The notes: generated by a model not told the origin, from the letters alone. A DNA stretch of 64,000 bases from Vitrella brassicaformis CCMP3155 (GCA_001179505.1 CDMY01000492.1:1-64000); one strand, 5' to 3'. Counted from the first letter of the stretch, positions 17,701 through 55,200 are shown. A program made the numbers and translations.

Positions 17701-18004
17701 CGACACATTATCCTCTCCATCCAATGCGAGTAACTTGCATACTGTCTCACTCCGCATCTGAATGGAAGCCGCGCAGGTTCGCCGAGGAAAAAGCACCTCT
17801 CGCATCATTCATCGCACCAGTGAGAAAGAAGACTTGCAACACTTCAGTTTTGGAATCAATCTCTGTCCCTTTGCCCTGCTGCAGATTCTCCAGTGTTTTC
17901 TCAGTCTGTCAATCTTGATGCAAGTCATCTTACACTGCAATGCAGTAAGAAACCTCATTAATTGTACCTCGCGTCTCATACAGCCACTTCTTCTTGATTG
18001 TGAC

Positions 18005-36330: not shown

Positions 36331-36969
36331 AACTGACAATACGCCTCATTCTTGCTAGAATAAAGAATTTATCGTGAACGCATCAACTCAGCGTTTCCCC
36401 ACACGCTCTCACAAAAAGAGAGAAAGACGGAAACAGCAGAGTGTGCCAACGATCGATCGAGGCATGTGTAATTGACAGAAACGATGGAGTGCTGCTGTTG
36501 TTGCGAAGTGCTCATGATGCCCTTCGCCCCTGTCTGTGACCCTGATGAAGGCGCTCGGCTCAGAGAAGTGGACGTGTGTGGACGTGTGTCGGGATGTGAT
36601 GGACGGATGGATTGGATGTCGTGGACCGTGTGCTGATGGAGAGGATGCCGCCTGGATGAATGGATGAATGGATGGTGCTGGTGCTGATGCTGATGGATGG
36701 CAGGCTGAAGGATAGTAGTTGTGTGTAGGCAAGCATGACGATAAGCCGTAGATACGCACAGCGAGAGGCAGGGCAGAAAGAAGCGCTAGATAACCCCGCA
36801 TTGCATGCATGCGTGGGCTTGGGGGCGTAAGACAGGAGATAGCAGCAGTTGGCCGAGCGAATTAGTGCCGTTGCGTTTCATGATTCGTTGTTGATCCTCC
36901 GATATGCCAACAATCCTGTGTTCGACGATGAAGGGTCACCGATGGTGCCTGATGAGCCACACGAGATAT

Positions 36970-39350
36970 GCAGGATCAAGTGGCGAGCGACTTCGACGTG
37001 GCCGAGCACGAGCTGGCGGGCGTGCTGCAGCAGCTCGTGCGCGAGAAGTGCGAGGTGTGGGGCGAGCACTTCACCAAGGGCATGAACCGGCCGGCGGACA
37101 TGCCCGCCGGTGTGTGCGTGCGAGACGAGGGGCTGCTGGTGCTGGGCTGCCCGTTTGGCACATCGGAGTTCATGGAGCGGCACTTCGCCAAGGTGCTCAA
37201 GAAGACCCAGCACCTTCTCGACAACCTGCCCCGGCTGGAGGACCCGCAGAGCGCCGGGAAATTCCTCCGCTTCTGCGCCACGCCGAAGTTCCACTACCAC
37301 CTCCGCACCTCCCTCCCCTTCACCCGCCCCCTCGCCGAGGCTGCTGGCAAGCACTCTCGCGCCCTCATCCAGGCCGCCTGCACCCTTTTCTTCCTCGGCG
37401 ACGTCCAGACCAAGACCGTCCGCCAGCTCAAGCTGCCGCTGACTGAGGGGGGGTTCGGCCTCACTGATGCCGCCCGCATCGCGCCAGCGGCGTACTTCGG
37501 CGCGAATGCGGTGGTGTTGGCCGATGTCCTCGCCCGCCACGAAGGCGCCGCGTGGATGCCGGCGCATGGGCGCGCAGGGCTGGAGGCGCAGCCATGGGTG
37601 CAAGCGATCCAGGCCGCGTACGACCACCTTCTCACCCACTACCCCCGCTCCCCCCAGTCCGACCCCCTGCCTGACGTCCGCAGCCTCATGCTCCGCCCCG
37701 TCGGCGGCCTGCAGGCCAAGCTGACCCAGCGCATCCACCAGCAGGAGTCCGCCTCCCTGCAGGCAGCCCTGAACGACATGCGTGACGACGCCGGCCACCC
37801 GACGACCGACGGAGCCCGTCTGCAGAGCTGCAAGGGGCCGGGGGCGACGGCATGGCTGCAGGCTATCCCATTCAGCCCCGCAACGACCATCTCCCCCGAC
37901 GCCTTCGTGTGGAATGTGCAGTTCCAGCTCGCGTGGTGAAGGGACCGACGACCTGTGGGGCGTGCACGAAGCCCTGCGACCCGTGTGGCGACCACATGCT
38001 CAAGTGCCCCAATCGCGGCTACCTCACCAACCGCCACAACACCGTCCAAGCGACCGTCTACCGTATCTGCAAGGAGGCCCGATGCCCCAGCGTGAAGACA
38101 GAGCAGCTTCTGCGTGACTACCAGTGCCCACTCCCGCAAACGACCGACAAGCAGCGGATGGACCTGGTGATCACCCAGCATGACGGCTCTAAGATCATGG
38201 CTGACGTCACCGGCACTCACCCCACTCACGCCGACCGCCCAGGCGACCCCAGGAACCTCACCAACCAGCGGCCCGGCTCAGTACTTCGCACCGCCGAGAA
38301 CCGCAAGAGGGGCCAGTACGCCGTTGCATGTGCATGAGGAGGGTACACGTTTTTGCCTTTGGCCTTCGAGTCGTATAGACGGTGGTCTCCGACTATGGAG
38401 ACCTTTTTGCACAAGCTAGGCAAGGCAGTGAAGGAAACTCACTACGGGGACGACAGAGATTTTTCAACAGGCCGCGTCGTGGCCCGATGGTGGGTCCTCT
38501 TGTCGTGTGCAGTCAGGCGTGAGTGTGCCCTCACGGTGCGCGGCAAGAGTGAGACCGCCACACCATTCATCCGCCCCTTCCCCCGAGACGAAGTCTGGGG
38601 GAGGGGCCCTTACTCTCCTTCCTAGGCCTTTTGCTCCGCACACCGTGACTTCGTGTGTGCGGGCGTGTCTGTATATGGGTGCGTGCGTGTGTGTGCGAAG
38701 GTGTGTATGCGGGTGAATGTGTGTGAGTGTGTGGGTGTGTGCGAGTGTGTGGGAGTGTGTATGAGTGTACGGGTGTCGGTGGGCGTGTGTGCGCGTGAGC
38801 TGCCGGCGTCCGTGTAGGGGTGGGTGACGTGGGTGGATGCGCCGGCGTGGCGCCCGTCTGCGTCAGGTCTGTCTATGTGTTTTGCCGCTCTTGTCGCGGG
38901 CGCGCTGGGTAGTCGGTCGATCGCCTGCCGCCCCCCTCCGCCATGGAGGCTGGGGCGGCGGTGCGCCTGACTCTCGTACATCTCCATCTCTCCACCCTTC
39001 CGTGCGTGCCTGTGCCGAGGGCGGGTTTGTGTGTGACCGGGCGATCTGCACTGACTGGCTGGCCACCTGGGGATGGGCGGTACGTACGTATAGAGTCATG
39101 GTGCAGCACGCACGCCTCCTCAAGCAGGCCGCTGGGGTGGCGTGTGTGCGATGTTCCCTGCCTACTCGTCTGTTCCCTCGTTCGCAGCGCACTGCCTACC
39201 CGCCTGTTTGCAGCCCCTGCCCTCTGCGTGCTGCGTGGTGCGTGGTGCGTGTTCGTGTTGCATGTTAGGGTGCGTGTTTGCATGTTGGGTCGGACAGACA
39301 AAGGACACGGCCGTCAGGCCACCTAGGGTGCTCCCTGAAACCGCTGCTCC
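36970..39350 (+). mobile_element. CRE family A, 5'-truncated copy with a long GT-rich 3' tail
   Basis: KCEVW..LVLGCPFG (RT domains 6-7), QLKLPLTEGGFGL, GATAWLQAIP, frameshift ~37935, CGACTKPCDPCGDHMLKC, RHNTV, QRMDLVI..ADVTGTHP, stop at 38336, ..FPRDEVWGRGPYSPS*38625. Confidence 0.85.
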
Positions 39351-40105
39351 GATATGACTTGACGTCATTCTCTCGAGATCTGTTGCTTCGGCACGGTCTT
39401 CGGTCGTTCCGACCACATTCCCTTCGGCAGGGCGTCTTCCCAAGCCGCCTTTGGAGCCGCAGAGTGATGGTGGAGTGCGCATGTGAGTGATGGTGGAGAA
39501 CGAGTACGTCGTCCTGCGGATCACCCTCTCGGTGCCGGTCACCCTCCCGGTGAGTCCGCAGCGAGGCGACACGAGTACTCGTACGACAGCTAGCTGCCCT
39601 TCTAGCATCCTCTTCCCTCAGCCAGATCTCGCTCTTCCTCTGAGTCCGCGTGCCTTCTCGTCCTTCCAGGACTCACCCTGGTGCTGACCTACTCCTCTCC
39701 TCTCTCCCCGACTGACCGGTTGCATATCAGGGGATGCTTTTGAGGGTTATGTCTCACTGGGAATGCATGCACGCATATCTGCCTGAGATCTGCCTGTCTG
39801 TCCGTCTGTGTTGTCTCTCTAGCCTCCCAGTGTGTGCCTACGTATCCGCCACAAGGTCCGTCCCCTCGCCGATCACATACTAAGGCAGACAACACGTCCA
39901 CACCCGCACATCGGTCAGGAACACGGGACACTCACTCAAAGCGGACGGCACGAAAGCATGTGTGTGGCTGGCTATCTCTCTCTCTCGGTTGGCTGAGATC
40001 AGTCGGTGATCTGGTGTGTTTGCGTATGGATGGCTGGTATGGTTCTCGGGTGGGTTTGACAGTTGCCAGAGAGAGGACATCCACACCATAACACTTTCGT
40101 AACAC

Positions 40106-40119
40106 TGGTGCATCTGCCG
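40106..40119 (+). promoter_or_regulatory. Putative primer-binding site (tRNA-Gly-like) of the gypsy-like element
   Basis: TGGTGCATCTGCCG lies one base after an LTR-type end ...CGTAACA (40104). It matches 13 of 14 positions of the complement of a typical eukaryotic tRNA-Gly 3' end (TGGTGCATCGGCCG), recalled from memory and not checked against this genome. Confidence 0.6.
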
Positions 40120-40359
40120 TTCTTTTTTTTCCATTCGCAGGTCTGTCGTTTGGCTGCGAGGGGTGTGGTCTGCCCATGGGCGTTGTCGTCATTGTGTTTG
40201 GTGTTGGTTTGGATGGATGTGTATCGGTCTGGATGAGAGCGAGATGGTGTCCATGTGGCTGTGGGGAGGATCAGATCAGCCGCACATAACGAGCCAGCCT
40301 CAGCCAGATCTACCACGAGAGCACCGGCATTCAACGTTGCGTCATCTCTGCTGTCCGCT

Positions 40360-40399
40360 GCTGTCGTTGCTGTCGTTGCTGTCGTTGCTGTCGTTGCTG
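40360..40399 (+). repeat. 9-bp tandem repeat (GCTGTCGTT)n in the gypsy leader
   Basis: About 4.5 perfect units. Confidence 0.85.
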
Positions 40400-40450
40400 T
40401 TGGGACGTGTGCTGGTGGTCGCAGGTTGAGTTTGTTTCGGTGCGAACAAG

Positions 40451-40636
40451 ATGACGACTTCTCCCCCCTCCTGGACTGACTGGCTCGATCTCATCTACAG
40501 GCGCACTGATCTCATCTACGCCTGCTACGTCGACGACATCATCGTCGCTTCCCGCACCCCTGCTGTCCTCTTTGAGCTGCTCTCTCACCTCAAACGCGTC
40601 GATCGGCTGTCCTCTGCTGCCTGGCGTGTGCGCTGA
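40451..40636 (+). CDS. 61-aa mini-ORF containing an isolated reverse-transcriptase YXDD palm motif
   Basis: ..ACYVDDIIVASRTPAVLFELLSHLKRVDRLSSA.. with YVDD at 40526-40537. Resembles the gypsy RT segment YLDDILIxSxTxxEHLxHLxxVLxRL. Confidence 0.5.
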   Translation: MTTSPPSWTDWLDLIYRRTDLIYACYVDDIIVASRTPAVLFELLSHLKRVDRLSSAAWRVR

Positions 40637-40747
40637 CCGTCCCGTTCGAACTCGTGAAGTCCTCCTCGAACTCTGAAGCCCTCCTGATGCCCCTGCGTTG
40701 TCTGGTGTCTGTAGCTGATCCTCGTCTGCCCGCTCTCTGCTGTTGTC

Positions 40748-42061
40748 ATGTCCAAGCCCTCGTCCAAGCCCTCGTCTCGTCTTCGACCTTCTGATCTCGT
40801 TCGTGGCCCCCTGCTCACCCACCACACGGCGTCCGAAACCATTCGCGAGAAACTCAACCGCTGCCTCAGGAGAGTGGATTACGACCGACGAGACGAGTAC
40901 GAGCTGGTGGGGTTTCTCTACGCTAAGGAGCAGGTCATTGACGAAATCGATGAGCTCGATGAGCGCCGCGATTGATCGGGTATCTCACGGAGGGAGTACG
41001 GCGAGAGGGTGAACGACATGCGTCGCCGTCTGACACATGTGCAGCAGGAGATCCAGCGTCGCACGGCGACTCGGCGACCCCCCTCCTCTCCCCCTCCCCG
41101 CACTCGTGCGCCCCGTCCCCGGTCTCGTTCTCGTTCGCGACATCTCTCGCCGCCCTCATATCAACGTGTCACGATCGACAGGAGCGGTGATCGTCGTCTG
41201 GACAGGAGGTCTGGTGATCGTCGGTCGCAGCGTCACGGTGGGGTGGAGCTCAAGCCTGCTGCTGTTGTTCAAGCAGAGGAAGCGGCGCGTGTGCAGACGA
41301 CCGAGCCCGCTGAGCCGTCTCAAGCACCCGAGACCCAGCAGCCCCCCACACAGCCACAGACGACCACACCACAGCCCTCCCACGCCACGTCTGAGCAGCA
41401 GCACACGTACAACCCCGACACCGAAGAGGTCGGCGACCAGGAAGATCAGGACGACGAGGAGCAACAGGAGGACTCTGAGGAACAACAGGAGGACGAGCAG
41501 CAGCACGAGGCCATCGAAGAAGCCGAAGAAGAAGAGCAGGAGACCGAGCGGGAGCAGCAGGAGGAGCCCACAAGCGACGAGCAACTCCCTACCCACCAGC
41601 AAGGTGCACAAGACAGTGCCTCTCAAGACCCCGCCCCCCACCCGACTCCCTCTCCCCCTCCCGCCCACGTCCCCCTCGCCCACACTCCCAAACTACCTGC
41701 TTGCACTCCCACTCGTGGTGTCTTCCCCCTAGAAGCGGCGGTCCAGGAGCAGCTGCAGTTCTACGTGCACTCTGTGGACCAGCTGTTCTTCACGGGCCTC
41801 TGGTTGTGCGGCCACTGCGATTATCAGACGGTGCGAGGTGCGTCGATTCAGCAGGGCGGAGAAGCGGACTTCTGGTTTCAGCCGCCGGCGTGCTGTGTCA
41901 AGTGTCAGAGCCCCCCACACAGGGCATACCCCTCAGCGGTCCCGGCATTCGCGACTGGCCCGTGGAACAAGGTCTACGACTACTCGCAGTTCCCCCCAGC
42001 GCAGCTCAGCGAGGAGGGTAATGAGGCTCGCGGCCAGCACATCGTAAACCTCGCGAAGTAA
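40748..42061 (+). CDS. Extra ORF upstream of gag (~437 codons, one internal TGA at 40973)
   Basis: ORFs 40748-40975 and 41009-42061 are in the same frame. It has a coiled-coil/Arg-rich N-terminal part, a Q/E-rich linker and a C-terminal CGHC...CVKC motif. Confidence 0.55.
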
Positions 42062-42317
42062 TCCCACACCCACTACTTCGACTCCTTTTTGCTGCCCCCC
42101 TTCCCCGACCCCTTTTTCCTGCTGATCGCCGCTGCTGCCTGTGGTGTGCTGCTGACCGACGGTGTCGCTGCTGATCGTGTGTGTATTGAGGGACTCGTCT
42201 GGCGCTGCGTGTGAGCTGGTGGTGGATCGATCGCTGTCTGGTGTTGATAACTGAGAGACCTGTGGTTGGTCCGTTCATAGTGGGACTCGTGTGTATATCG
42301 TGAACAAGCGGTCCATC

Positions 42318-42396
42318 CCATCCTTCCTGTTCGAATCCATCCTTCCTGTTCGATCCCATCTTCCTGTTCGAACCCGTCATTCCCGTTCGAATCCAT
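42318..42396 (+). repeat. ~19-bp imperfect tandem repeat immediately before the gag ATG
   Basis: Four copies of (c)ttcc(t/c)gttcga(a/t)(t/c)cc(a/g)tc ending just before ATG 42401. Confidence 0.7.
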
Positions 42397-42400
42397 CATC

Positions 42401-45400
42401 ATGTCACGTGCACAGCCACATTCGTCCATGCATACGAGTGACAGCATCTTGGGGCCCATGCCGTCACGTGGCCCACCTGACTTCAATGCTGCTGCTCCAT
42501 CCCGCCCCTCATCATTACATGAATCAACTGCTGCTGTTCATGCTGCTGCTGCTCCATCACATGCATCACATGACCCATCTGCTGCTGCTGCTTCATCCCA
42601 TCCACTACAGGCACCACCGCCACAAACACCACATACACCTGCACACATCGCATCACGTGCTGCATCATCGGGCCATTCGAGGAGGAATGTCGTCACACCT
42701 GTGGAGGGAGATGGGCAGCCGTCCAGCCGTCTCGCTGCAGCGAATGCAAAAGCGTCGATCACGGCATGGCGGGCGTCGGAGAGGTTACAGGGGTTCTTTG
42801 AAGGCCCCAGCGCGCCCAGTGGGCCTGCTGCTGGTCAGCTGGATCACACCCTCCCTCCGCGTGAGGTCGCGGCCGAGCCCCACCGGCTGAATACTATGCA
42901 GCTGCGCAATGGGAGCCGTATCCCCACATCTCCAAGCACGAATGCCCAAGCCGTTGTCTGTGCTCACCCATTCGCTGGCGAGGCTCGGGGGGGCCCTACC
43001 GTTTCCACCGAGAGAGCTGCTGCGGGGCTGTCGGACGGGCTGGACAGGTCGACTTCGAGAGGCACAGACAGGCGGAGACGGAGCGATGATAACGAGGGAG
43101 ACGTGTTTGATGACGAGGGTGACCAGGACGGCCAGGACTCCCCTTCACCATCGCCGCCCACCACAAGTGGGCAGTCGGGTAGGGAGGCCCCAGGACGGGC
43201 GTCCGCTGCTGCACAGCCGGTTGCCGTGGCTGATGGTGGTGGTGCTGAGGGTGACGATTCACCTCGGACGGTCAGGCAGCTCGACACCTCGCCTGACACT
43301 CAACCACAAGCAGAGGCACAAGGACGACCGTCGCATGGACCTGCCCACCGGCGAGAGGGTGACACGTCGGATGAATCGATGACTGTTAGTAGAAGAGAGT
43401 TTGAGGCGATGCAGGCGGAGCTGGCCAGGTTGAGGCAAGGGGCATCCTGCCGTAGCACTCCTGCGTCGGTATATCAGCGCACTCCTGGGGAGCTCCGTCT
43501 TCGGCCACGAGTGTCTGTGGTGGTCAAGTATGGCGACATTCGCAAGTGGGACTGGGCTCAAGTGCTGCCTGTCTTGTACCCACCCACCACGGATGCGGAT
43601 CTCTTGTTGGCGACCTTGCAGGAGCAGATGGAGGTGTTGGAAGGCCTCACTCATGCGGAGAGGCGGAGAGTCTTCTGGGATTGGGTACAGAGAGCCGAGG
43701 AAGAAGGCATCGTCCGCTACGATGACGGCGCCGGAACGCTCACTCGTGTCATAGCGGACCGGCCAGGCTGCAGAGTCAGTCCCATCCATCTCCCGGAGGT
43801 CTCGGAGATCCCCACCCGCCCACCCGGTCGCACGGCATCGATTCCCCCGGGCGCGTCTGCTGTGTGTGCGGGGGGTGCGGTCGCACGCGGAAGAGCTGCT
43901 GCACGCGAGAGGGGCACTGGAGGGGCTGGACGAGAGGCGGAAGCACACCAACAGCACCAGCCGGAGGTGAGGCACCCGCAGCAAAACCCCCGCCCACATA
44001 ATACCCAGCCCCCAGCAGGCGACTCAAGGACCGCAGGGCAGCCAATGCAGAACGCATCTTCGGCTCAGCAAAACCACCCACATAATGCACCCAATGAGGA
44101 CCGCCAGCCGCCCCTCCGTATCTTGCAGCGAACGTCTGCCGAGGCAAAAGGATCAGGGGACCAACACGTCCCCTTCACCGCAGTACAACACTTCGAGGCC
44201 CCGCCCAACGTCGCAGCGTCCAGCCAGCAAGTCCACCACACTAACCAGCGGACACGTGCGGCCGCTGCATATGCAACAGCCGGCGGCAGCGGCGACCCAG
44301 ATTGGCCACACAGAAATCCTGGGGACCGTGACAGTGGACGTGGCAACAACGGAGGACGTGGGCCTGATGGTGGAGGGAATAGTGGAGGCCGCCGCGAAGG
44401 TGCTGGTGGAGAGGGCCGGCGGGGTGGTGATCGTGATAGGGACCGACGAGACGATCGCCGACGAGATGAGAGGAGCCGTGACGGACACCTCAGCCCCGTC
44501 CTCCAGGATGTGTTCGAGAGAGAAGATGATGACTTGGGCAGGGAGTGGGAGGATATGGTGGCTCGCGAGCGCGCGAATCGAGCGCATGAAGAGAGGCTGC
44601 GACGAGAGGAGGAACGTGAGCAGCGGCGGCGGGCGATGAAAGAGCTGAAGCCGTCCCCTTTCAGTGGCGATGATGGGATGCCGGCAAAGGAGTGGTTGAG
44701 AGAGTTGGAAATGTGGTTCGACGAGGCTGCCGTAGTCATCCAGATGAGGCCGCAGATGTTCCACAAGCAGCTCAAGCCAGGAAGCAGTGCAGCCGCTTGG
44801 TGGTACAACTTGCCAGAGGTGACTCCCGGCAGCTGGAATGAGCTGCGGGAGGCATTCATCGAACAGTACGTGCCACGCGCAATCTCAGACCTCATCTATC
44901 GACAAGACCTGAAGCGGATGCGGATGGAGGACAATGAGACGATCGATGCATTCACCAAGCGTTTCAACATCCAATGCACGAAGGTCAATGGCCTCACCGA
45001 TGACGAGAAGAGGACGAACTATCTGTCCGCATTGGCTCGACCGGTGTACAACGCCATGAAGCCGTTGCTGATTGGGAAGAACGACCAGGAGATGAAGAAG
45101 GTCAACTATGCCTACCTCTGTATGCTCGCCCGCGAGGCAGCACCTGAAAAATACCGGAAGAGCGACACTTCAGATACAGCTGACCGTGACAAGCGCCCCA
45201 ACAAATCGAGCAATCGCCGCGGCGACAAACCTCCACGCCCTCTCTTCGCCGCAACGAGCACCGACAACGCTCTCGCCTCACTAATGGCCGTGACGACCCC
45301 CGCACTGCTTGCATCACTGCAGCAGCCCGCCACCATAGCAGCCAAACAGGACGATAGTGAGGATGAGGATCAAAGGGAAGAATATGAGGAGGAAGAGGAG

Positions 45401-45883
45401 GACGACGACGACGAGGCGGATGAGTTGACCACGGGCAAGACATCGATTGGCAGCACCACAGCCGACCAACTCACAGCTGCCCAGGCAGTGGCTGCCCTCC
45501 AGCTGAATGCCCTTAGCAACCCCATGCTCGCCCTCGCAAATCCTCTGGCTGCCCTTGCCAATCCATTCGCTGCTCCACTGGCGGCTCCGCTCGCCGCTCT
45601 CTTCAACAAACCCCAAGGCCTCTCAGACACTCGACTCGACGAACTCTGCAGACAGAACCCAAAAGCCAAGGACAATCTGAAGAAGTTCCCGTGTGAGCAC
45701 TGTGGACACCCATCCCATTCCATGATGACCTGCATCAAGCTCAAGAAGCTGCTCGTGGAGGCATGCGACGATCCATCGCGACGTCAGTCTGGCCCGCAGA
45801 GAGGAGGCGCACCCGACAAGCCCACCAAGTCGCCGCCTCCTCGCAAGCCACCTGAGGAAAACGAGAAGCCTTCGCGCCCCTGA
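42401..45883 (+). CDS. gag: Retrotransposon gag (1160 aa)
   Basis: LKPSPFSGDD..KEWLRELEMWF..WWYNL..SWNELREAFIEQY..LKRMRMEDNETIDAFTKRF (retrotransposon gag core) and the CX2CX4HX4C knuckle CEHCGHPSHSMMTC. Confidence 0.85.
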   Translation: MSRAQPHSSMHTSDSILGPMPSRGPPDFNAAAPSRPSSLHESTAAVHAAAAPSHASHDPSAAAASSHPLQAPPPQTPHTPAHIASRAASSGHSRRNVVTPVEGDGQPSSRLAAANAKASITAWRASERLQGFFEGPSAPSGPAAGQLDHTLPPREVAAEPHRLNTMQLRNGSRIPTSPSTNAQAVVCAHPFAGEARGGPTVSTERAAAGLSDGLDRSTSRGTDRRRRSDDNEGDVFDDEGDQDGQDSPSPSPPTTSGQSGREAPGRASAAAQPVAVADGGGAEGDDSPRTVRQLDTSPDTQPQAEAQGRPSHGPAHRREGDTSDESMTVSRREFEAMQAELARLRQGASCRSTPASVYQRTPGELRLRPRVSVVVKYGDIRKWDWAQVLPVLYPPTTDADLLLATLQEQMEVLEGLTHAERRRVFWDWVQRAEEEGIVRYDDGAGTLTRVIADRPGCRVSPIHLPEVSEIPTRPPGRTASIPPGASAVCAGGAVARGRAAARERGTGGAGREAEAHQQHQPEVRHPQQNPRPHNTQPPAGDSRTAGQPMQNASSAQQNHPHNAPNEDRQPPLRILQRTSAEAKGSGDQHVPFTAVQHFEAPPNVAASSQQVHHTNQRTRAAAAYATAGGSGDPDWPHRNPGDRDSGRGNNGGRGPDGGGNSGGRREGAGGEGRRGGDRDRDRRDDRRRDERSRDGHLSPVLQDVFEREDDDLGREWEDMVARERANRAHEERLRREEEREQRRRAMKELKPSPFSGDDGMPAKEWLRELEMWFDEAAVVIQMRPQMFHKQLKPGSSAAAWWYNLPEVTPGSWNELREAFIEQYVPRAISDLIYRQDLKRMRMEDNETIDAFTKRFNIQCTKVNGLTDDEKRTNYLSALARPVYNAMKPLLIGKNDQEMKKVNYAYLCMLAREAAPEKYRKSDTSDTADRDKRPNKSSNRRGDKPPRPLFAATSTDNALASLMAVTTPALLASLQQPATIAAKQDDSEDEDQREEYEEEEEDDDDEADELTTGKTSIGSTTADQLTAAQAVAALQLNALSNPMLALANPLAALANPFAAPLAAPLAALFNKPQGLSDTRLDELCRQNPKAKDNLKKFPCEHCGHPSHSMMTCIKLKKLLVEACDDPSRRQSGPQRGGAPDKPTKSPPPRKPPEENEKPSRP

Positions 45884-47820
45884 GGGGTGGAGTGCGAGGG
45901 CCCATCTCACCACCCCTCCCCCTCATGCATACGACTGACCCACCTGCTCGTGCGTGTAATGGGGATGCGGCCGTTGACGACGGACGTGACGGATGTGACG
46001 GGGATGCGGACTGCTCTGACGTGGCATCGTCGATGAGTGCGTGTGGCGCCTCCTCCGATGGGTATCATCTGAGTGGATTTGTCGACGATCAGCCGACAGA
46101 CGGGTTGCGAGAGGGGGCTGCTGGGGATGTCGATGCTGATTCGCAGCCGTCTGCCGGTCCGGCTGTTGTTCGTGCTGAATGCCCTTCATACCTGCATGCT
46201 GCCCGCCACCATGTCGCCCGCCTTGTTCGTACTCATCCATTTGCCATCTTGTATGAGGGGCCGGGCGACGCATTCAAGGGACATCTGCGGCACCGCCGAC
46301 AGGGGGGTCGGCGCCAGAGGAACTCGACTCACGCGGCTGCCGGGCTTCTTGCAGTGCTGCCTTCGGCGGGCCTGCTGATGTCACCAATTGGGGCGTTGGG
46401 CGTGGGTGCATGCGGGAGGCAAGGAGATCGTGGGAGTTGCCAGGAAGGTCCACGCTCGTCTACTCAGTCGGAGCCCCAACCAAACACAAGCCAGCCGTCC
46501 TTCAGCGGGCCGTCACTCTGCTCGTTGGCTCAGGATCAGCCACCATCGCCAGCGTCACGGTGCCAGATCCTTCTCGGCAGGGAGCCTGAAGATGAAGGCA
46601 CGACACACACAGCCGTCGACAGAAGCCCCCCCTCCCCAAGGCAGGACACTGCTACCCTTCCCCTTGCTTCTGTTGACCCACCGTGTGGCGAATGGGCGGA
46701 GCTGGTCAACCCCTCCTCTGACGATGAGTCGACGTGCAGCTCGACTGCCCGAGGAAGGGCTCGGTCATATGATGGATGGGACACCCCATCGCTCGCCGCC
46801 CTGCCAGAAACACCGGACCACAATGTGTGTGTCCTGACCCCTACCCCACTCGTCTCCCCTGGACACTCACCTGGCAGGGATCGAGACCCTGGCTGGCGGC
46901 ACTTGTGGGTGGAAAGACGGCCCCGTACGCATAAAGGTGATGATCATCTTCACGCGTTGGCATCTCTGTGGATGGAGATCGACGGTGATGGAGCGTCGTC
47001 TGCCGTTGACAGCAGCACCCCCTTCCTCCCCTCCTCGTCTTCTTCGACCTCGTCGAGCCTTGCCTCTTGGGACGCACGCGAGAGCTGCCGGACCGACGAT
47101 CGACGACGAGCATTCATGGCGTCCCTGGTAGAGGCGCTGAAGACGAAGGAGGAGAAACTCAGAGCTGCATACGAGGAGAAAGGCAAGAACCCCTTGGTGA
47201 AGGCTCAGCTGGGAATGATTGCTCACGTCGAGGGCATCCTGACGGCGGTCTTGGTGGACACTGGGGCGGGGCCCTCGTGCATTAGCCATGAGCTCTTCCT
47301 CCGACTGAGCCGCCTCAGCCCAGCCATCCGTGAGAGCCTTCGAGCTCGCTTCACCCCACTTGATGACACGATCGTTCCAGAAGGCGACCAGAACACCCCT
47401 CTCGCCGTTGTCGGAGTGGTCCGTCTACGTGTGGGCAACCACAGAAGAGACAATCTGTGGCCGTTCCGCATCGTGAAGGGGCTCTGTGCACCTGTGATCG
47501 TGGGCATGGATATGTTGGGGTTCGCTTCTGCCTTCAACATGCGCAAGCAACGCCTGCGGCTGCCTGGCTTCCCTCAGTTCCATCTGATCGGTTATCCTGA
47601 CGCCAGGGCGCGGGTTGGTCTTGCAATGCCTCAGGCGGCTCCAGCTGCTGATATGGCCTACCGATGTGAGGACCTTGGGGATGTCTTTGATCGTCTGTGC
47701 CCATTGCATGCACCTGAGGAGACACCATCCATGTACACACCCTCTTTGGATTCATCTTCGTTTTCGACGTCACCGTACCCACCGTCTGTGTCGCGACATG
47801 CATTTGTTTGCAGTCAATGA
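45856..47820 (+). CDS. pol ORF with a retropepsin-type aspartic protease, in the -1 frame relative to gag
   Basis: VLVDTGAGPSCIS (~47245) and F.IV..L..PVIVGMDML. The frame opens at 45856, overlapping the end of gag. Confidence 0.8.
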   Translation, partial: GKREAFAPLRGGVRGPISPPLPLMHTTDPPARACNGDAAVDDGRDGCDGDADCSDVASSMSACGASSDGYHLSGFVDDQPTDGLREGAAGDVDADSQPSAGPAVVRAECPSYLHAARHHVARLVRTHPFAILYEGPGDAFKGHLRHRRQGGRRQRNSTHAAAGLLAVLPSAGLLMSPIGALGVGACGRQGDRGSCQEGPRSSTQSEPQPNTSQPSFSGPSLCSLAQDQPPSPASRCQILLGREPEDEGTTHTAVDRSPPSPRQDTATLPLASVDPPCGEWAELVNPSSDDESTCSSTARGRARSYDGWDTPSLAALPETPDHNVCVLTPTPLVSPGHSPGRDRDPGWRHLWVERRPRTHKGDDHLHALASLWMEIDGDGASSAVDSSTPFLPSSSSSTSSSLASWDARESCRTDDRRRAFMASLVEALKTKEEKLRAAYEEKGKNPLVKAQLGMIAHVEGILTAVLVDTGAGPSCISHELFLRLSRLSPAIRESLRARFTPLDDTIVPEGDQNTPLAVVGVVRLRVGNHRRDNLWPFRIVKGLCAPVIVGMDMLGFASAFNMRKQRLRLPGFPQFHLIGYPDARARVGLAMPQAAPAADMAYRCEDLGDVFDRLCPLHAPEETPSMYTPSLDSSSFSTSPYPPSVSRHAFVCSQ

Positions 47821-48119
47821 GCGTTGTTCATTGGCTTTGCATGGTTGTGCTCCCTTTTGTTTGCTTGGTACGGACTGATGCTTAGACGAACTTCGTCGCC
47901 CGTTCTAAGTATAGACTTGCCTTTCACAGTGAGGCAGTAGTCGCGGAGATAGATAGCGATGGCCACAATCATAAAAGGAATGCCAGCAGTTCTGCTCTCC
48001 ATGGGTTGGACGGGCGGGGAGAGGGGGGGCGATAGAAGTGCGTGGGTTGGTGAAAGTAATGGCGTGAGATGAGTGAATGTATGGGAGAGAGAGTGCCGTC
48101 CGCACGTCTCATTCTTCTG

Positions 48120-48620
48120 CCTCACGCACAGAGAGAACCAGTGAGAGGACAGAAATCATAATGCGATGGCTGTCTCCCTTTTTTCCTTGCGTGTGTGCTG
48201 TCTTCAGTCCTCACTGACCGGTGCGTGAGCTTCAGGGTTTGAGTGAGTGAGTGGGGTCTGCTCTGTCTGTCTGTGTGTAGTTGTGTCTTCTTGAATGATT
48301 CGCTTGGCCTTTTCTGCTGTCTGCAGGGCGAGGAAGCCGAACAGCCACATCGAAGGTTTCTGGCGTTCTCATGCTCCTGCCCCATCATGATTGGCTGTCC
48401 CTGTTGATTCACTATGGGCTGACCGTTGCCATCCGTCCGTGGCACAAGTATCTTCACCGGCGGGACGTCTTCATCCGTGGTTGGTAGGTAGATCTTCATG
48501 TTCATCTCTCTTGCTGCTAGATAGGCTCTCAAGATAAAATCACATTCGCGCCACTTGATATCGCCACTCCTGCCGGTAAGATGGGGAAGGTGGTTTTCGT
48601 CTCAAGATTGAGTGTGGTCA
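48120..48620 (-). mobile_element. Degenerate copia-type gag N-terminal fragment (different family)
   Basis: HLPHLTGRSGDIKWRECDFILRAYLAAREMNMKIYLPTTDE aligns by eye with VPKFSGDPADWEAFHMKLQGLMTARSLEQLLPTTE of the 21-26 kb copia. Confidence 0.45.
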
Positions 48621-48847
48621 TCTTTGTTGTCGTTGTTGTTATTGTCTTTCTTCAGGTACGGCTGGTTGTTGACTGCTGCTAATGCTGAGCTCCCAATCGA
48701 ATAAGAATAAGTGGCTTATAGCCATGTTAGCATCTGTCCCTCGTCATTACTGAGCTCGCAGGGCCTCCGGCCTTTTTTTCTCCTTAATATGACGGCTGCT
48801 CGGGCCACACCTGCCAGCATCATATCCAGCTCGAGCAGCTCTGCAGA

Positions 48848-51800
48848 ATGAGTACAGAATCGACCCCAGTCTCAGCCGACTCAGCCCATCCGCCCCCGCC
48901 GTCTCAGGAGAGCGTCTCTGCAGTGCTGGGAGACGATGTTTCGCCCTTGCAGCCAGCCGCTGGTCCTGTGCGGTGTTGCCCATGCAACAAAGACCGGAAC
49001 AGTACCACTGGATCGAGGTGCAAGAGGAAGGGGAAGAAGCGGGGCTGCCCCTGTTTCGAGAAGGGCAAGAAGTGCACCAACTGCCGTTCCTGTGACCTAG
49101 GCATATGTGAGAATCGAGAGCCCGAGGACAATACCTTCACCGCCGAGGAATCGAACTTTCCCTCTACTCATCCTCGTGCCTTCCACTCGGATGAGTCTTC
49201 GCTACGATGCGGATCCGCGGCGTATGTCCCTCCCAAGTGTGCCAGCTGCCACATCCGCCCGGCGTCCTCAAGCAAGGGCATCTGCTACGCCTGCCTCAGC
49301 AATGGTGCCGAGCCTCTCCACCGCCCGCCTCCCGCCATACCCCTCGCTCCCCCTGCTGGCCCTCCGACGTCTTCATTCGTCCAGGAGAGGATTCATGAGG
49401 CCTTCGGAGCCACCGATTTCAATCAACAGAGCAACCTCATGGACACCGACTGGCAGCGCTGGCACGCCCGCCTCGGCCCGCTGCGAGGGTGCCTTTGGGA
49501 TCCGCCGGGTGCTTCGGGGAAGCGGCTGGCCCGACTGCTTGCAACCGAGGGCCGTCGGTGGCGTGAGGAGCAGCTGCCGAGTGAGCGCGTCCTCATCTGC
49601 GCTTGCACGATTCTCTACCGGGCGCCAGATGTCACTGGCGAGGACATCGCCGAGACGGTGGAGCGGCGGATGGACCAATGGGAGAAGGGCGACTTCGAGC
49701 AGCTCGTACAGGAGGCTGAGCGCAACAACGCCTTCCTGGCCACCAGACCTGTCGGCAAGGACGACGCCAACGAGGCCACTCTGCGCCAATTCCGTCGCCT
49801 CATCGACAAGGGCAAGGTCAGGCAGGCCGTTCGGCTCCTGACCGAGCGGGAAGGGGGAGGCGCGCTGGACCCCAACGACCTGGCTGAGGCCGACCCTGCG
49901 GGCCGCACCGTTCGGGAGGTCCTCGAGTCGAAGCACCCTGCCCAGAGTGACCCTGACCCATCCTGCTTCCTCGACCGGCCCCTCCCTCCCCTCACCCAGG
50001 TCGAGATCACCGCCAACCACATCGAGCGAGCGGCACGGGCAACGAAGGGAGGCGCCGGCCCTGTTGGTGGCGAGTCATCGGTCTGAAAGATTCTCCTCCT
50101 CAAGTGCGGCGCGGCAAGTGCGGAGCTGCGCAGTGAGTTAGCGGCCATGGCCTCACGCATCGCCAATGAGGACGTGCCCTGGGAGCAGCTGCAGGCCCTG
50201 CGCGCATGTCGGCTTATCGGCCTGGACAAGCAACCGGGTGTGCGGCCCATCGGGATCGAAGAGGTCCTCATGCGCATCATGGGCAAGGCGATGGCCAAGG
50301 CGGTCGGGGTGGATGCGGAGATTGTATGCGGTGCGGACCAGCTGTGTGCCGGGCTCAAGGGGGGCGTGGAGGGTGCCATTCACGCGGTCTCCGGCCCGTT
50401 TGACTCGGGAGGCGTGGAGTGCGCGCTGCTGGTGGATGCGACGAACGCCTACAACACGATGAATCGCGCTGCCGCCCTGTGGAACGTCCGCGTCTTGTAG
50501 CCGTGGTGCTCTCGCTTCCTGTTCAACACCTATCGCGGCCATGCGGCCCTCTACATGCGCGACCAATCCGCGCCGCTGTGGAGTCGAGAAGGCACCACAC
50601 AAGGCGACCCCTTGGCCTCCCTCTTTTACTCCGTGGCGACCCTGCCGCTTGTATGGGAGATGAAGCGGCCAGCAGAGGAGGGCCCTCAGGCGTGGTTTGC
50701 CGACGACTCCGCCAAGGTGGGAGACCTCCAGCCGGTGCGTGACTGGTGGGATGAGCTGCAGCGGAGAGGGCCATTGAGGGGCTATCACCCCAACGGCAAG
50801 AAGAGCAAGCTGGTGGTGCGGGCGGGGTGTGAGGAGCGGGCGCAAGAGGTGTTTGGCGATACTGACGTGGAGATCGTGAGTGGCGCTCGATATATGGGGG
50901 GCTTTGTGGGGACCGCAGAGGGCAAGCGGGCCTACGCCACCGNNNNNNNNNNNNNNNNNNNNNNNNNNNNNNNNNNNNNNNNNNNNNNNNNNNNNNNNNN
51001 NNNNNNNNNNNNNNNNNNNNNNNNNNNNNNNNNNNNNNNNNNNNNNNNNNNNNNNNNNNNNNNNNNNNNNNNNNNNNNNNNNNNNNNNNNNNNNNNNNNN
51101 NNNNNNNNNNNNNNNNNNNNNNNNNNNNNNNNNNNNNNNNNNNNNNNNNNNNNNNNNNNNNNNNNNNNNNNNNNNNNNNNNNNNNNNNNNNNNNNNNNNN
51201 NNNNNNNNNNNNNNNNNNNNNNNNNNNNNNNNNNNNNNNNNNGAGCAGCTCGTACAGGAGGCTGAGCGCAACAACGCCTTCCTGGCCACCAGACCTGTCG
51301 GCAAGGACGACGCCAACGAGGCCACTCTGCGCCAATTCCGTCGCCTCATCGACAAGGGCAAGGTCAGGCAGGCCGTTCGGCTCCTGACCGAGCGGGAAGG
51401 GGGAGGCGCGCTGGACCCCAACGACCTGGCTGAGGCCGACCCTGCGGGCCGCACCGTTCGGGAGGTCCTCGAGTCGAAGCACCCTGCCCAGAGTGACCCT
51501 GACCCATCCTGCTTCCTCGACCGGCCCCTCCCTCCCCTCACCCAGGTCGAGATCACCGCCAACCACATCGAGCGAGCGGCACGGGCAACGAAGGGAGGCG
51601 CCGGCCCTGTTGGTGGCGAGTCATCGGTCTGAAAGATTCTCCTCCTCAAGTGCGGCGCGGCAAGTGCGGAGCTGCGCAGTGAGTTAGCGGCCATGGCCTC
51701 ACGCATCGCCAACGAGGACGTGCCCTGGGAGCAGCTGCAGGCCCTGCGCGCATGTCGGCTTATCGGCCTGGACAAGCAACTAGGTGTGCGGCCCATCGGG

Positions 51801-54800
51801 ATCGGGGAGGTCCTCATGCGCATCATGGGTAAGGCGATGGCCAAGGCGGTCGGGGTGAATGCGGAGATCGTGTGCGGTGCGGACCAGCTGTGTGCCGGGC
51901 TCAAGGGGGGCGTGGAGGGTGCCAATCACGCGGTCTCCGGCCTGTTTGACTTGGGAGGCGTAAAGTGCGCGCTGCTGGTGGATGCGACGAACGCCTACAA
52001 CACGATGAATCGCGCTGCCGCCCTGTGGAACGTCCGCATTTTGTGGCCGCGGTGCTCACGCTTCCTGTTCAACACCTATCGCGGCCATGCGGCCCTCTAC
52101 ATGCGCGACCAATCCGCGCCGCTGTGGAGCCGAGAAGGGACCACACAAGGCGACCCCTTGGCCTCCCTCTTCTACTCTGTGGCCACCCTTCCGCTCGTGT
52201 GGGAGATGAAGCGGCCAGCAGAGGAGGGCCCTCAGGCGTGGTTTGCCGACGACTCCGCCAAGGTGGGAGGCCTTCAGCCGGTGCGCGACTGGTGGGATGA
52301 GCTGTAGCGGAGAGGGCCACTGAGGGGCTATCACCCCAACGGCAAGAAGAGCAAGCTGGTGGTGCGGGCGGGGTACGAGGAGCGGGCGGAGAGGTGTTTG
52401 GCGATACTGACGTGGACATCGTGAGTGGCGCTCGATATATGGGGGGCTTTGTGGGGACCGCAGAAGGCAAGCGGGCCTACGCCACTGAGAGGGTGCAAGA
52501 GTGGCAGCGGTGTGTCAACCGGATGGTGGACGCAGCGGCCAAGTACCCGCAGGCAGCCCACACGGCACTCACAACGTCTCTGCAGGCCGAGTGGAATTTC
52601 TTCATGCGGGTGATGCCTGAGGAACGAGCGACATTCGAGCCGCTNNNNNNNNNNNNNNNNNNNNNNNNNNNNNNNNNNNNNNNNNNNNNNNNNNNNNNNN
52701 NNNNNNNNNNNNNNNNNNNNNNNNNNNNNNNNNNNNNNNNNNNNNNNNNNNNNNNNNNNNNNNNNNNNNNNNNNNNNNNNNNNNNNNNNNNNNNNNNNNN
52801 NNNNNNNNNNNNNNNNNNNNNNNNNNNNNNNNNNNNNNNNNNNNNNNNNNNNNNNNNNNNNNNNNNNNNNNNNNNNNNNNNNNNNNNNNNNNNNNNNNNN
52901 NNNNNNNNNNNNNNNNNNNNNNNNNNNNNNNNNNNNNNNNNNNNACGAAGGGAGGCGCCGGCCCTGTTGGTGGCGAGTCATCGGTCTGAAAGATTCTCCT
53001 CCTCAAGTGCGGCGCGGCAAGTGCGGAGCTGCGCAGTGAGTTAGCGGCCATGGCCTCACGCATCGCCAATGAGGACGTGCCCTGGGAGCAGCTGCAGGCC
53101 CTGCGCGCATGTCGGCTTATCGGCCTGGACAAGCAACCGGGTGTGCGGCCCATCGGGATCGAAGAGGTCCTCATGCGCATCATGGGCAAGGCGATGGCCA
53201 AGGCGGTCGGGGTGGATGCGGAGATTGTATGCGGTGCGGACCAGCTGTGTGCCGGGCTCAAGGGGGGCGTGGAGGGTGCCATTCACGCGGTCTCCGGCCC
53301 GTTTGACTCGGGAGGCGTGGAGTGCGCGCTGCTGGTGGATGCGACGAACGCCTACAACACGATGAATCGCGCTGCCGCCCTGTGGAACGTCCGCGTCTTG
53401 TAGCCGTGGTGCTCTCGCTTCCTGTTCAACACCTATCGCGGCCATGCGGCCCTCTACATGCGCGACCAATCCGCGCCGCTGTGGAGTCGAGAAGGCACCA
53501 CACAAGGCGACCCCTTGGCCTCCCTCTTTTACTCCGTGGCGACCCTGCCGCTTGTATGGGAGATGAAGCGGCCAGCAGAGGAGGGCCCTCAGGCGTGGTT
53601 TGCCGACGACTCCGCCAAGGTGGGAGACCTCCAGCCGGTGCGTGACTGGTGGGATGAGCTGCAGCGGAGAGGGCCATTGAGGGGCTATCACCCCAACGGC
53701 AAGAAGAGCAAGCTGGTGGTGCGGGCGGGGTGTGAGGAGCGGGCGCAAGAGGTGTTTGGCGATACTGACGTGGAGATCGTGAGTGGCGCTCGATATATGG
53801 GGGGCTTTGTGGGGACCGCAGAGGGCAAGCGGGCCTACGCCACCGAGAGGGTGCAGGAGTGATAGCGGTGTGTCAACTGGATGGCGAACGCAGCGGCCAA
53901 GTACCCGCAGGCAGCCCACACGGCACTCACAACGTCTCTGCAGGCCGAGTGGGATTTCTTCATCCGGGTGATGCCTGAGGAATGAGCGACATTCGAGCCG
54001 CTGCGAGATGCCCTCACCCACTACCTCACCCAGCTCTCCAGCCATGCGGTGACCGCCACTGAGGCCCAGCTGATGATACTGCCTGCGCGTCATGGGGGGA
54101 TGGGGGTGAGGGACCCGACGGAGCGAGTGGCGGCGGCGTATGAGACGTCCACCAAGGGCACTTCCCTGCTGGTGTCCACCATTCAGAACGGCGACCCACG
54201 CGACGGCCCTCCATTCAACCCCTTCCAGCACCGTGCCGATATGCAGCAAGCGGTCAGGCAGGAGCGGCGGGCGACCGATGAGGCTGCCAAGGAGCGCTTC
54301 GAGGACGGCCTCCAGCAGCTGCCCCCAGAGAGACGACGGGCGGTCCACCGGGCGATCGAGGCCAAGACGGCCGGGTGGGTGACTTGCCGGCCTGACGCAG
54401 AGGACCACACCGACCTGACGCCTGACGAGTTCCGCGACAACATGGCCATCCGATACGCCTACGAGCCTCCCAAAATGCCCACCCACTGCGACGGCTGCGG
54501 GGCTCCGTACTCGCTCGACCACGCCCTCAACTGTGGAGTGGGTGGGTTAGTGATTCGGCGGCACAACGAGGTGGTGAACGTGCTGTGCGACCTTTCTGCC
54601 AAGGCTTGGGGCGAGTCGGCGGTCAGGAAGGAGGTGGTGATTGTGGAGCCCGAGGAGGGGGAGAAGGGGGTGCGGATGGACATGGTGGTGAGGGGGGTGT
54701 GGGAGCGGCAGAAGGACGTGTCGTTTGACCTCTGCGTGACAAACGCTGACGCGTCATCCTACCGCAACCAATCGACCGCCTCCATCCTCAAGAACAAGGC

Positions 54801-55200
54801 CAAGGCCAAGGCCAAGAAGGCCTACCACAGCCGTGTGTGCGAGGACAAGTCCATCTACTTCACCGCCTTGTGCGTGACGGTGGACGGTGTGTGGGGCAGA
54901 GAGGCCAATGGTTTTTTCAGCCGCCTGGTTGAGAAGCTGCGCACCAAGGCTGCGTGGGCAGACAAGTCGTATAGCCAGGTGATGGGATGGGTTCGTGCTC
55001 GTCTGTCTATTGCGTTGGCGCGTAGTGCGAGTATGTGTGTGCGTGGTGGGCGGCGCCGCTGGAAGATACGCCAGGCGGGCGCTGAGGATGGTGCTGGCAT
55101 GTTTGTCGTGTGATTTGATTGATGGTTGGTCGATTGACGCAGTTCATTTCATGAGAGACCGACAGACTCTGCCTGCCGTTGCGCTATGAGTCAATGTATT
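48848..55200 (+). mobile_element. CRE family B non-LTR retrotransposon, near full length, single ORF broken by stops; internal region repeated across gaps
   Basis: N-terminal Cys-rich domains. RT: GVRPIGIGE, LLVDATNAYN, GTTQGDPLA, FADD, GYHPNGKKS, RYMGG. Knuckle CDGCGAPYSLDHALNC, then RHNEV, RMDMVVRG and FDLCVTN (REL endonuclease); stop at 55113. Stops also at 50084, 50498, 52305, 53401, 53860/53863 and 53983. Confidence 0.9.

What the first reader, a model, noticed from the sequence alone, without database searches (positions are those of the whole stretch)
40104..42061. Gypsy-like element whose leader holds an RT-palm mini-ORF and a large extra ORF upstream of gag, while pol itself has no RT
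Seen in sequence: after an LTR-like end (40104) and a tRNA-Gly-like PBS (40106-40119) come a (GCTGTCGTT)n repeat and a clean ATG-to-stop 61-aa ORF with ACYVDDIIVASRT..HLKRVDRL (RT motif C and the following helix). Next is a ~437-codon ORF with a CGHC..CVKC motif, then gag, then protease, with no RT at the normal position. Established: YXDD is the RT catalytic motif, and extra 5' ORFs are known in plant Ogre/Tat elements, but I know of no stand-alone RT-palm micropeptide in a leader. Inference: this is either a conserved leader microprotein (regulatory, dominant-negative or uORF) of an undescribed Ty3/gypsy lineage, or a fossil RT scrap trapped in the leader.
Basis: partly seen in the sequence, partly recalled or inferred. 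Interest (0 to 1): 0.75.

Follow-up and report, generated by a model that had tools for sequence, protein, structure and literature searches.

The report
Decayed RT scrap in retrotransposon leader
The 61-codon "RT mini-gene" is an accidental open frame, present in this copy only, over an old unselected scrap of reverse-transcriptase sequence in the leader of a Ty3/gypsy jumping gene of the alga Vitrella; the "missing RT" is because this copy is cut off after its protease.

Summary
The LTR end, a 15-nt PBS matching the genome's own tRNA-Gly(GCC), the 9-nt repeat, the 61-aa ATG-to-stop ORF with YVDD, a large ORF upstream of gag, then gag and protease are all present. Two details are wrong. The "437-codon ORF" carries an in-frame TGA at 40973 in this copy, though it is intact in sibling C846. 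"Pol has no RT" is an artefact: family homology is documented to 47302 and unrelated repeats begin at about 47788. Other copies (C818, linked through C268 and C1003) carry the RT tail, RNase H and integrase.

The mini-ORF is RT-derived. A gypsy-RT HMM scores it 18.1 bits (E=3e-4), top of 3132 six-frame peptides, against a decoy maximum of 8.7 bits. It covers the motif B tail, YxDD and the following helix.

It is not a conserved microprotein:
- Its ATG lies in a 77-nt segment missing from four siblings, which have no Met in that frame.
- One sibling reads YLDN and has lost the stop.
- dN/dS is 0.94-2.8.
- Nucleotide identity is no higher than in the flanking leader.
- There is no RNA covariation.

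Verdict: a fossil RT scrap fixed in the family's leader. The extra ORF upstream of gag is real and family-specific, with unknown function, and is mildly interesting. Interest is low. The scan's earlier notes do not cover this feature.

The parts
36499..36906 (+). 5' LTR, first part (starts TGTTGCGAA)
   Evidence: Siblings C823, C846, C1003, C33 and C268 join this block directly to 39348 onward. The C268 5' LTR starts at the same TGTTGCGAAG.
36907..39347 (+). Foreign 2441-nt insertion inside the LTR, flanked by an exact 9-nt target-site duplication TCCGATATG (36898-36906 and 39348-39356); not part of the element
   Evidence: Absent from all siblings. The duplication was read. Part of it resembles another repeat on C823.
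39348..40104 (+). 5' LTR, second part (ends TTCGTAACA, an imperfect inverted repeat of the start)
   Evidence: 89-94% identical to siblings. The C268 3' LTR ends at the equivalent of 40104-40106.
40106..40120 (+). Primer-binding site complementary to the 3' end (+CCA) of tRNA-Gly(GCC)
   Evidence: The tRNA gene was found twice in this genome (C246:18434-18504 and C338:18279-18349). The reverse complement of its 3' end plus CCA equals window 40106-40120. The first 10 nt are conserved in six copies.
40349..40400 (+). 9-nt microsatellite (TGCTGTCGT, 5.7 copies), expanded in this copy
   Evidence: siblings have fewer units.
40430..40633 (+). RT-derived scrap (stop-to-stop 68 codons; motif B tail, YVDD, following helix)
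   Evidence: Gypsy-RT HMM 18.1 bits, E=2.9e-4, HMM positions 51-104, top of 3132 six-frame peptides. Decoys reach at most 8.7 bits. Pfam RVT_1 E=0.0013.
40444..40521 (+). About 77-nt segment holding the ATG and the first 23 codons of the mini-ORF; absent from C823, C846 and both C1003 copies, and only its first ~30 nt are kept in C268
   Evidence: Alignment A1 and identity table. It extends the colinear match to RT, so it is probably ancestral and was deleted in the other subfamily.
40451..40636 (+). 61-aa ATG-to-stop mini-ORF, complete in this copy only
   Evidence: no Met in four siblings; dN/dS 0.94-2.8.
40748..42061 (+). ORFx, a family-specific extra ORF upstream of gag, broken here by an in-frame TGA at 40973-40975
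   Evidence: Intact 386 aa from its first Met in C846 (= P0001, an annotated Vitrella protein). Only 4 homologues, no Pfam family. The CxxC...CCxxC motif and many C-terminal columns are invariant. N-terminal omega is 0.31-0.56 in 14 of 15 pairs.
42401..45883 (+). gag ORF (1160 aa)
   Evidence: Retrotrans_gag E=6e-11 at residues 795-878. A CCHC knuckle, CEHCGHPSHSMMTC, is in the translation.
45892..47820 (+). Protease ORF; family homology is documented to 47302 and foreign repeats begin at about 47788
   Evidence: gag-asp_proteas E=0.0014 (below cut-off) with VDTGAG. The only other copy (C43) matches to 47302, where its contig ends. From 47788 onward only unrelated repeats match.

Best explanation
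The window holds the 5' two-thirds of a Ty3/gypsy-type LTR retrotransposon of Vitrella brassicaformis. In order it has: a 1.17-kb 5' LTR split by a later foreign insertion, a tRNA-Gly(GCC) primer-binding site, a 630-nt leader, an extra ORF (ORFx, with a nonsense mutation in this copy), gag and protease. Family homology is documented to 47302, and unrelated repeats begin at about 47788, so the RT, RNase H, integrase and 3' LTR that other family members carry are missing from this copy. Inside the leader lies a patch of about 200 nt that descends from a reverse-transcriptase gene (motif B tail, YxDD, next helix). It was already in the leader of the common ancestor of the sampled copies. It most likely arrived through an aberrant template switch or recombination during reverse transcription; this step is inferred, not shown. 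It has since drifted as non-coding leader sequence. In the window/C268 subfamily an ATG happens to precede it, and in this one copy the frame stays open to a TGA, which makes the 61-codon ORF. It has no catalytic capacity, because motif A and most of the palm and fingers are absent, and there is no sign that it is selected as a peptide, a uORF or an RNA structure.
For: Truncation: family homology is documented to 47302, and from about 47788 only unrelated repeats match. There is no family pol, 3' region or 3' LTR anywhere else in the window. The family has pol: the C818 open frame shows the RVT_1 tail (profile positions 165-204) at the edge of an assembly gap, RT_RNaseH 8.5e-35, Integrase_H2C2 and rve. 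The link to this family is the C268 element, which has 5' LTR, PBS, leader, pol C-terminus, 3' region and 3' LTR, with CAGCCG on both flanks, and C1003, which has pol C-terminus, 3' region, LTR, leader and ORFx. RT origin of the scrap: gypsy-RT HMM 18.1 bits, E=2.9e-4, rank 1 of 3132 peptides. Sibling scraps rank 2, 4, 6 and 8. Decoy sets (reversed, plus 20 shuffles) reach at most 8.7 bits. The match to P0034 and P0005 is colinear and nearly gap-free. Pfam RVT_1 gives E=0.0013. No selection: the ATG and 23 codons are missing in four siblings, which have no Met in the frame. C823 reads YLDN and has lost the stop. dN/dS is 0.94-2.8 in all ten pairs. Nucleotide identity is 83-87% (window against siblings), the same as or lower than the neighbouring leader at 84-94%. 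None of 29 predicted RNA pairs shows a compensatory change.
Against: The RT similarity is short (about 55 aa) and weak. Sibling scraps alone give no Pfam hit at E<=1, and a five-sequence profile finds no RT among solved structures. The family's own YxDD region lies in an assembly gap in C818, so the scrap could not be compared with its presumed parent; the nearest RT available (P0005) gives only 22% identity. Only seven copies, all from one fragmented assembly, were available. dN/dS on 38 codons has wide error. No expression data could be examined.
Confidence: 0.8

Rival explanations
1. Chance resemblance: the leader stretch never was RT sequence, and YxDD plus a hydrophobic pattern arose by accident in a GC-rich non-coding leader.
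For: Sibling versions give no Pfam hit. The profile of five copies finds no RT in the PDB. BLAST against the closest RT gives only E=0.01-0.17.
Against: An unbiased six-frame search with a gypsy-RT HMM puts this peptide first of 3132 at E=2.9e-4, and a sibling version second. Twenty-one decoy sets never exceed 8.7 bits. The match is colinear over motif B tail, motif C and the helix, with the spacing seen in real RTs.
Confidence: 0.1
2. Functional leader peptide or uORF: the mini-ORF is translated from the genomic RNA and regulates gag/ORFx translation, or acts as an RT-mimicking peptide, at least in the window/C268 subfamily.
For: The ATG is shared by the window and C268. The ORF is clean in the window, and the stop is kept in four of five copies.
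Against: Only one assembled copy has the complete ORF. C268 deletes the RT-like part. Four siblings have no start. dN/dS is at or above about 1, and conservation is no higher than in the flanks. The window copy is itself dead: truncated, with a nonsense codon in ORFx and a split LTR.
Confidence: 0.04
3. Cis-acting nucleic-acid element: the patch is kept because the RNA or DNA serves in packaging, dimerisation, or as a homology patch for strand transfer, not because of its coding history.
For: The patch is present in every copy whose leader is intact across that position (five of seven copies), despite 13-17% divergence between the window and its siblings.
Against: It is no better conserved than the surrounding leader. 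A 77-nt deletion is tolerated in one subfamily. RNAalifold finds no compensatory pair, and the covariation term is unfavourable at +1.88.
Confidence: 0.06

Closest known systems
Ty3/gypsy (Metaviridae) LTR retrotransposons
   Same: TG...CA LTRs, a tRNA-complementary PBS one base after the LTR, gag with Retrotrans_gag and a CCHC knuckle, a DTG protease, and in family members the order RT, RNase H, integrase. The closest proteins are gypsy-type pol fragments.
   Different: This copy is truncated before RT. The family carries an extra 386-437-codon ORF between leader and gag. A chromodomain-like tail seen by eye gets no Pfam Chromo hit.
LTR retrotransposons with additional ORFs (aORFs), reviewed in PMC7264820; bdelloid elements in PMC5408684
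   Same: ORFx is a sense-strand extra ORF present in most copies. It has no homologue outside the element family, as described for many aORFs; PMC7264820 states that aORFs occur upstream or downstream of gag-pol.
   Different: Most described aORFs lie between pol and the 3' LTR. ORFx lies upstream of gag, in an alveolate alga, and has a coiled-coil, RS-rich, acidic and CxxC...CCxxC layout with no database match.
Reverse transcriptase palm domain (Pfam RVT_1, PF00078)
   Same: The mini-ORF aligns to profile positions 139-175, covering the motif B tail, YxDD and the next helix.
   Different: It scores 19 bits against a cut-off of 29.6. Motif A, the fingers and the thumb are absent. It is 61 aa against about 205 profile positions, so it cannot be a polymerase.
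Upstream ORFs in retroviral and retrotransposon leaders
   Same: A short ATG-to-stop frame lies in the leader ahead of the main ORFs.
   Different: A regulatory uORF keeps its start and stop across copies. Here the start is missing from four siblings, and the peptide evolves neutrally.

Membership tests
Ty3/gypsy LTR retrotransposon | Long terminal repeats with TG...CA ends and a target-site duplication | tested here: met
   The LTR runs 36499-40104 (minus the insertion), TGTTGCGAA...TTCGTAACA. The C268 copy has both LTRs with CAGCCG on both flanks, though the last 3 nt of its 3' LTR are ambiguous. The window copy has no 3' LTR.
Ty3/gypsy LTR retrotransposon | PBS complementary to a host tRNA 3' end, next to the 5' LTR | tested here: met
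   Fifteen nt (40106-40120) match the 3' end plus CCA of tRNA-Gly(GCC), which occurs twice in this genome, with 0 control hits.
Ty3/gypsy LTR retrotransposon | Pol domain order protease, RT, RNase H, integrase | tested here: met
   Met for the family: C818 shows the RVT_1 tail, then RT_RNaseH (8.5e-35), then Integrase_H2C2, then rve. The YxDD core lies in an N gap. Not met in the window copy, which stops after the protease.
Chromovirus clade of Ty3/gypsy | Chromodomain at the integrase C-terminus | tested here: inconclusive
   The C-terminus reads ...YYVRREGRLPAWENESEL..., which looks chromodomain-like by eye, but Pfam gives no hit even at E<=10.
Reverse transcriptase (RVT_1) | Score above the curated cut-off and the full set of palm motifs (A, B, C) | tested here: not met
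   19 bits against 29.6. Only HMM positions 51-104 of a 130-position motif A-to-thumb model are matched. No motif A is found in any frame of the leader.
Conserved micropeptide / regulatory uORF | Start codon, stop codon and frame kept across copies | tested here: not met
   Four siblings have no Met. A 77-nt indel removes codons 1-23. C823 has lost the stop.
Conserved micropeptide / regulatory uORF | Purifying selection on the peptide (dN/dS below 1) | tested here: not met
   NG86 dN/dS is 0.94-2.8 (one pair has dS=0) over 38-39 codons in ten pairs.
Retrotransposon additional ORF (aORF) | Present in most copies of the family, open over long divergence, no cellular homologue | tested here: met
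   ORFx is found in six copies. It is intact in C846 and open up to gaps or single lesions in C1003a and C33. Only 4 homologues exist, all from the Vitrella element family. N-terminal omega is 0.31-0.56 in 14 of 15 pairs (C823 vs C846 is 1.02), against 0.5-5 in most off-frame comparisons.

The most novel reading that the evidence does not exclude
In the window/C268 subfamily the RT-derived patch is not mere debris. It would be a translated leader peptide that mimics the motif B-C surface of the element's own RT and tunes reverse transcription or downstream translation. Together with ORFx it would make this alveolate Ty3/gypsy lineage one with two accessory products ahead of gag.
Probability: 0.03. 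Interest if true: 0.6.

Novelty: new member of a known kind. Interest (0 to 1): 0.2.

Why it matters
Little for the headline claim: there is no stand-alone RT micropeptide and no RT-less pol, only a truncated copy carrying a fossil RT patch. Two things are modestly useful. First, the family is now delimited, which helps annotate a genome whose transposons are barely described: LTR limits, a PBS matched to the host's own tRNA-Gly(GCC), two subfamilies, and a non-autonomous derivative in C268. Second, ORFx is a real, family-wide extra gene upstream of gag with no known relative. That position is uncommon for additional ORFs, and this is an alveolate example that could be tested for a role in RNA handling or nuclear steps. 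The scrap also records an ancient internal rearrangement of a retroelement genome.

Tried and rejected
1. Conserved microprotein: rejected on start, stop and frame, and on dN/dS.
2. Decayed nested RT insertion with frameshifted remnants: tblastn of the family pol and of P0005, and an RT HMM over all six frames of the leaders, found nothing beside the scrap. A 7.5-bit 'PFG'-like hit inside the LTR (window 39363-39464) is within decoy range and was dismissed.
3. Pol continuing beyond a nested insertion in the window: no hit. The integrase just past the window end (C492:64004) is not of this family, as it is absent.
4. Conserved RNA structure: no covariation. One search, with two sequences, was uninformative.
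5. Function of ORFx: Pfam found nothing. The AlphaFold model was poor (pLDDT 42.7), so no fold search was run. The ESM Atlas gave only weak zinc-ribbon leads at 0.78-0.80.
6. Profile of the scrap against the PDB: no RT.
7. The big representative-protein search was not used. A 46-position profile cannot reach significance against 1.8 billion sequences, and the targeted HMM test answered the question.

Full report
**Source.** The window is scaffold C492:1-64000 of a 72,700,666-bp assembly in 1064 pieces. Those are exactly the figures published for Vitrella brassicaformis CCMP3155 (PMC4501334). A sibling ORF is 100% identical to an annotated Vitrella protein (P0001).

**What is in the sequence.**
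- The 61-aa ATG-to-stop ORF at 40451-40636, with ACYVDDIIVASRT...HLKRVDRL, is real. Pfam RVT_1 matches it weakly: E=0.0013, 19 bits against a cut-off of 29.6, profile positions 139-175.
- The 9-nt repeat is real: 40349-40400, 5.7 copies.
- The LTR end at 40104 is real. The string TTTCGTAACA-C-TGGTGCATCT recurs in six copies, and a 3' LTR in C268 ends at that point.
- The PBS guess was tested against the genome. The pattern GCATCTG-N(50-64)-CGGCAGATGCA hits twice (C246, C338), with 0 hits for the control. Both hits are a 71-nt tRNA whose anticodon loop TTGCCAT gives Gly-GCC. Its 3' end plus CCA is complementary to window 40106-40120, 15 nt.
- Gag has Retrotrans_gag (6e-11) and a CCHC knuckle. 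The next ORF has VDTGAG and a sub-threshold aspartyl-protease match.

**Corrections to the observation.**
- The "437-codon ORF" (40748-42061, here called ORFx) has an in-frame TGA at 40973-40975 in this copy.
- The 5' LTR is 36499-36906 plus 39348-40104. All siblings join these two blocks directly.
- The intervening 2441 nt is a later insertion, flanked by an exact 9-nt duplication, TCCGATATG.

**Why there is no RT here.** The only other copy of the protease region (C43) matches to 47302, where its contig ends. From 47788 onward only unrelated, highly repeated sequences match, followed by a tandem non-LTR array. No family pol, 3' internal region or 3' LTR occurs anywhere in the window. The copy is truncated.

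The family does have pol. On C818 an open frame reads, from the edge of a 300-N assembly gap, the last 40 positions of RVT_1 (WVEHLRRLALVLERLRDHNMKIKPAKCYF...). It continues with RT_RNaseH (8.5e-35), Integrase_H2C2 and rve.

That pol belongs to the same family as the window copy, on two grounds:
- C268 holds a short non-autonomous element. It has a 5' LTR, PBS, leader (to the equivalent of 40473), pieces of ORFx, the last 70 codons of pol, a 1.5-kb 3' region and a 3' LTR. CAGCCG lies on both flanks.
- C1003 has the pol C-terminus (95% identical to C818), the 3' region, an LTR, the leader and ORFx in one stretch.

The nearest public protein with a complete RT is another Vitrella gypsy-type pol, P0005, 67% identical to the C818 fragment.

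**Is the mini-ORF RT-derived?** I built an HMM from 63 gypsy-type RTs, taking 130 aa around YxDD. I searched every stop-to-stop peptide in all six frames of the window and five sibling loci, 3132 peptides and 183,518 aa in all.
- The best hit of all is window 40430-40633: 18.1 bits, E=2.9e-4. It aligns to HMM positions 51-104, running LknapatF to YlDDivifSkt to ehlehL..v..rL.
- Sibling versions of the same stretch rank 2, 4, 6 and 8.
- Reversed peptides and 20 residue-shuffled sets reach at most 8.7 bits.
- Against individual RTs the match is colinear and nearly gapless, for example with P0034 and P0005.

So the stretch is RT-derived, but it is only a scrap of about 55 aa. No motif A and no thumb are found in any frame of the leader.

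Two caveats apply. Sibling scraps alone give no Pfam hit. A five-sequence profile finds no RT among PDB chains.

**Is it a conserved peptide?** No.
- In the alignment of six leaders, about 77 nt (40444-40521) carrying the ATG and codons 1-23 are absent from C823, C846 and both C1003 copies. C268 keeps only the first ~30 nt, then has a deletion.
- The four siblings have no Met in that frame. C823 reads YLDN and has lost the stop.
- NG86 dN/dS over the shared 38-39 codons is 0.94-2.8 in all ten pairs, no lower than in the two wrong frames.
- Nucleotide identity of the scrap is 83-87% for window against siblings and 92-93% among siblings. That is the same as or lower than the adjacent leader and LTR.
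- RNAalifold finds no compensatory pair.
- The 77-nt segment extends the in-frame RT match by about 7 bits. It is therefore more likely ancestral and deleted in the other subfamily than a new insertion (inference).

**ORFx.** It is one intact ORF in C846, 386 aa from its first Met. It is open up to gaps or single lesions in C1003a and C33, and carries one stop or frameshift in C823 and in the window.
- It has only four database homologues, all from the same element family (two from the Vitrella genome, one each from ENA and JGI), and no Pfam family.
- The N-terminal helix-rich part has omega 0.31-0.56 in 14 of 15 pairs in the true frame (C823 vs C846 is 1.02), against mostly 0.5-5 in the other frames. 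The rest has omega about 0.5-1.3 in most pairs.
- The C-terminal CxxC...CCxxC block and many neighbouring columns are invariant across five sequences.
- Structure prediction was poor, and the Atlas gave only weak zinc-ribbon leads.
- It fits the known category of additional ORFs of LTR retrotransposons (PMC7264820), in the less common position upstream of gag.

**Mechanism and verdict.**
- Shown: the element's anatomy, its truncation, the family pol, the RT-likeness of the scrap, and the lack of selection on it.
- Inferred: that the scrap entered the leader of the family's ancestor through an aberrant template switch or recombination during reverse transcription, and has since drifted. Its source RT lineage could not be determined, because the family's own YxDD region lies in an assembly gap.
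- Verdict: the headline idea, a stand-alone RT-palm micropeptide in an RT-less gypsy element, is not supported.

**Limits.**
- No expression data were available.
- Earlier notes of this scan concern neighbouring features and other elements of the same genome, not this one. They served only as an early lead for the organism, which I then checked myself.

Noticed in passing
window 36907-39347: A 2441-nt insertion inside the 5' LTR with an exact 9-nt target-site duplication, TCCGATATG. It carries ORFs 36968-37939 and 37852-38337 with no Pfam hit, and part of it resembles a repeat on C823. It is probably the 3' part of a non-LTR element.
   Followed up: partly
window 47788-47910, 48034-48278, 48287-48690: Three short repeats with dozens of copies across the genome: the ~120-nt unit at 83-98% identity, the others at 76-83%. 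They begin exactly where the gypsy copy breaks off. Their nature is unknown.
   Followed up: no
window 48750-55200: A tandemly arranged non-LTR (CRE-like, according to another note of the scan) element with units spaced 1357-1546 nt apart in the assembly, including N gaps; 92-93% identical to a copy on C823.
   Followed up: no
window 20491-26424 (minus strand): A copia-type element with repeat blocks about 5.0-5.2 kb apart at both ends (20491-21128 and 25514-26323, 99-100% identical). ORFs carry Pol_BBD, gag_pre-integrs, rve and SH3_retrovirus. No RT domain was seen in the two large ORFs scanned.
   Followed up: partly
window 13000-15700 and 17900-20300: Large arrays of a 60-nt satellite with more than 70 copies.
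   Followed up: no
window 42315-42404: A 19-nt (or 37-nt) tandem repeat in the spacer between ORFx and the gag start. ORFx and gag are in the same reading frame, separated by the ORFx stop.
   Followed up: no
L023 (C1003:1-6462): A tandem arrangement: pol C-terminus, 3' region, LTR, leader, ORFx (part), N gap, partial LTR, leader, ORFx. This is either a recombined array of the family or an assembly collapse.
   Followed up: partly
G000 C246:18434-18504 and C338:18279-18349: Two identical 71-nt tRNA-Gly(GCC) genes whose 3' end primes this retrotransposon family.
   Followed up: yes
window 39363-39464 (inside the LTR) and its siblings: A peptide resembling RHGLRSFRSLPFG gives a 7.5-bit match to RT motif B in C268. 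This is within the decoy range, so it is probably chance.
   Followed up: yes
G000 C492:64004-64285: An integrase core (rve, E=8e-10) starts just past the window's end. It is not of this family.
   Followed up: no
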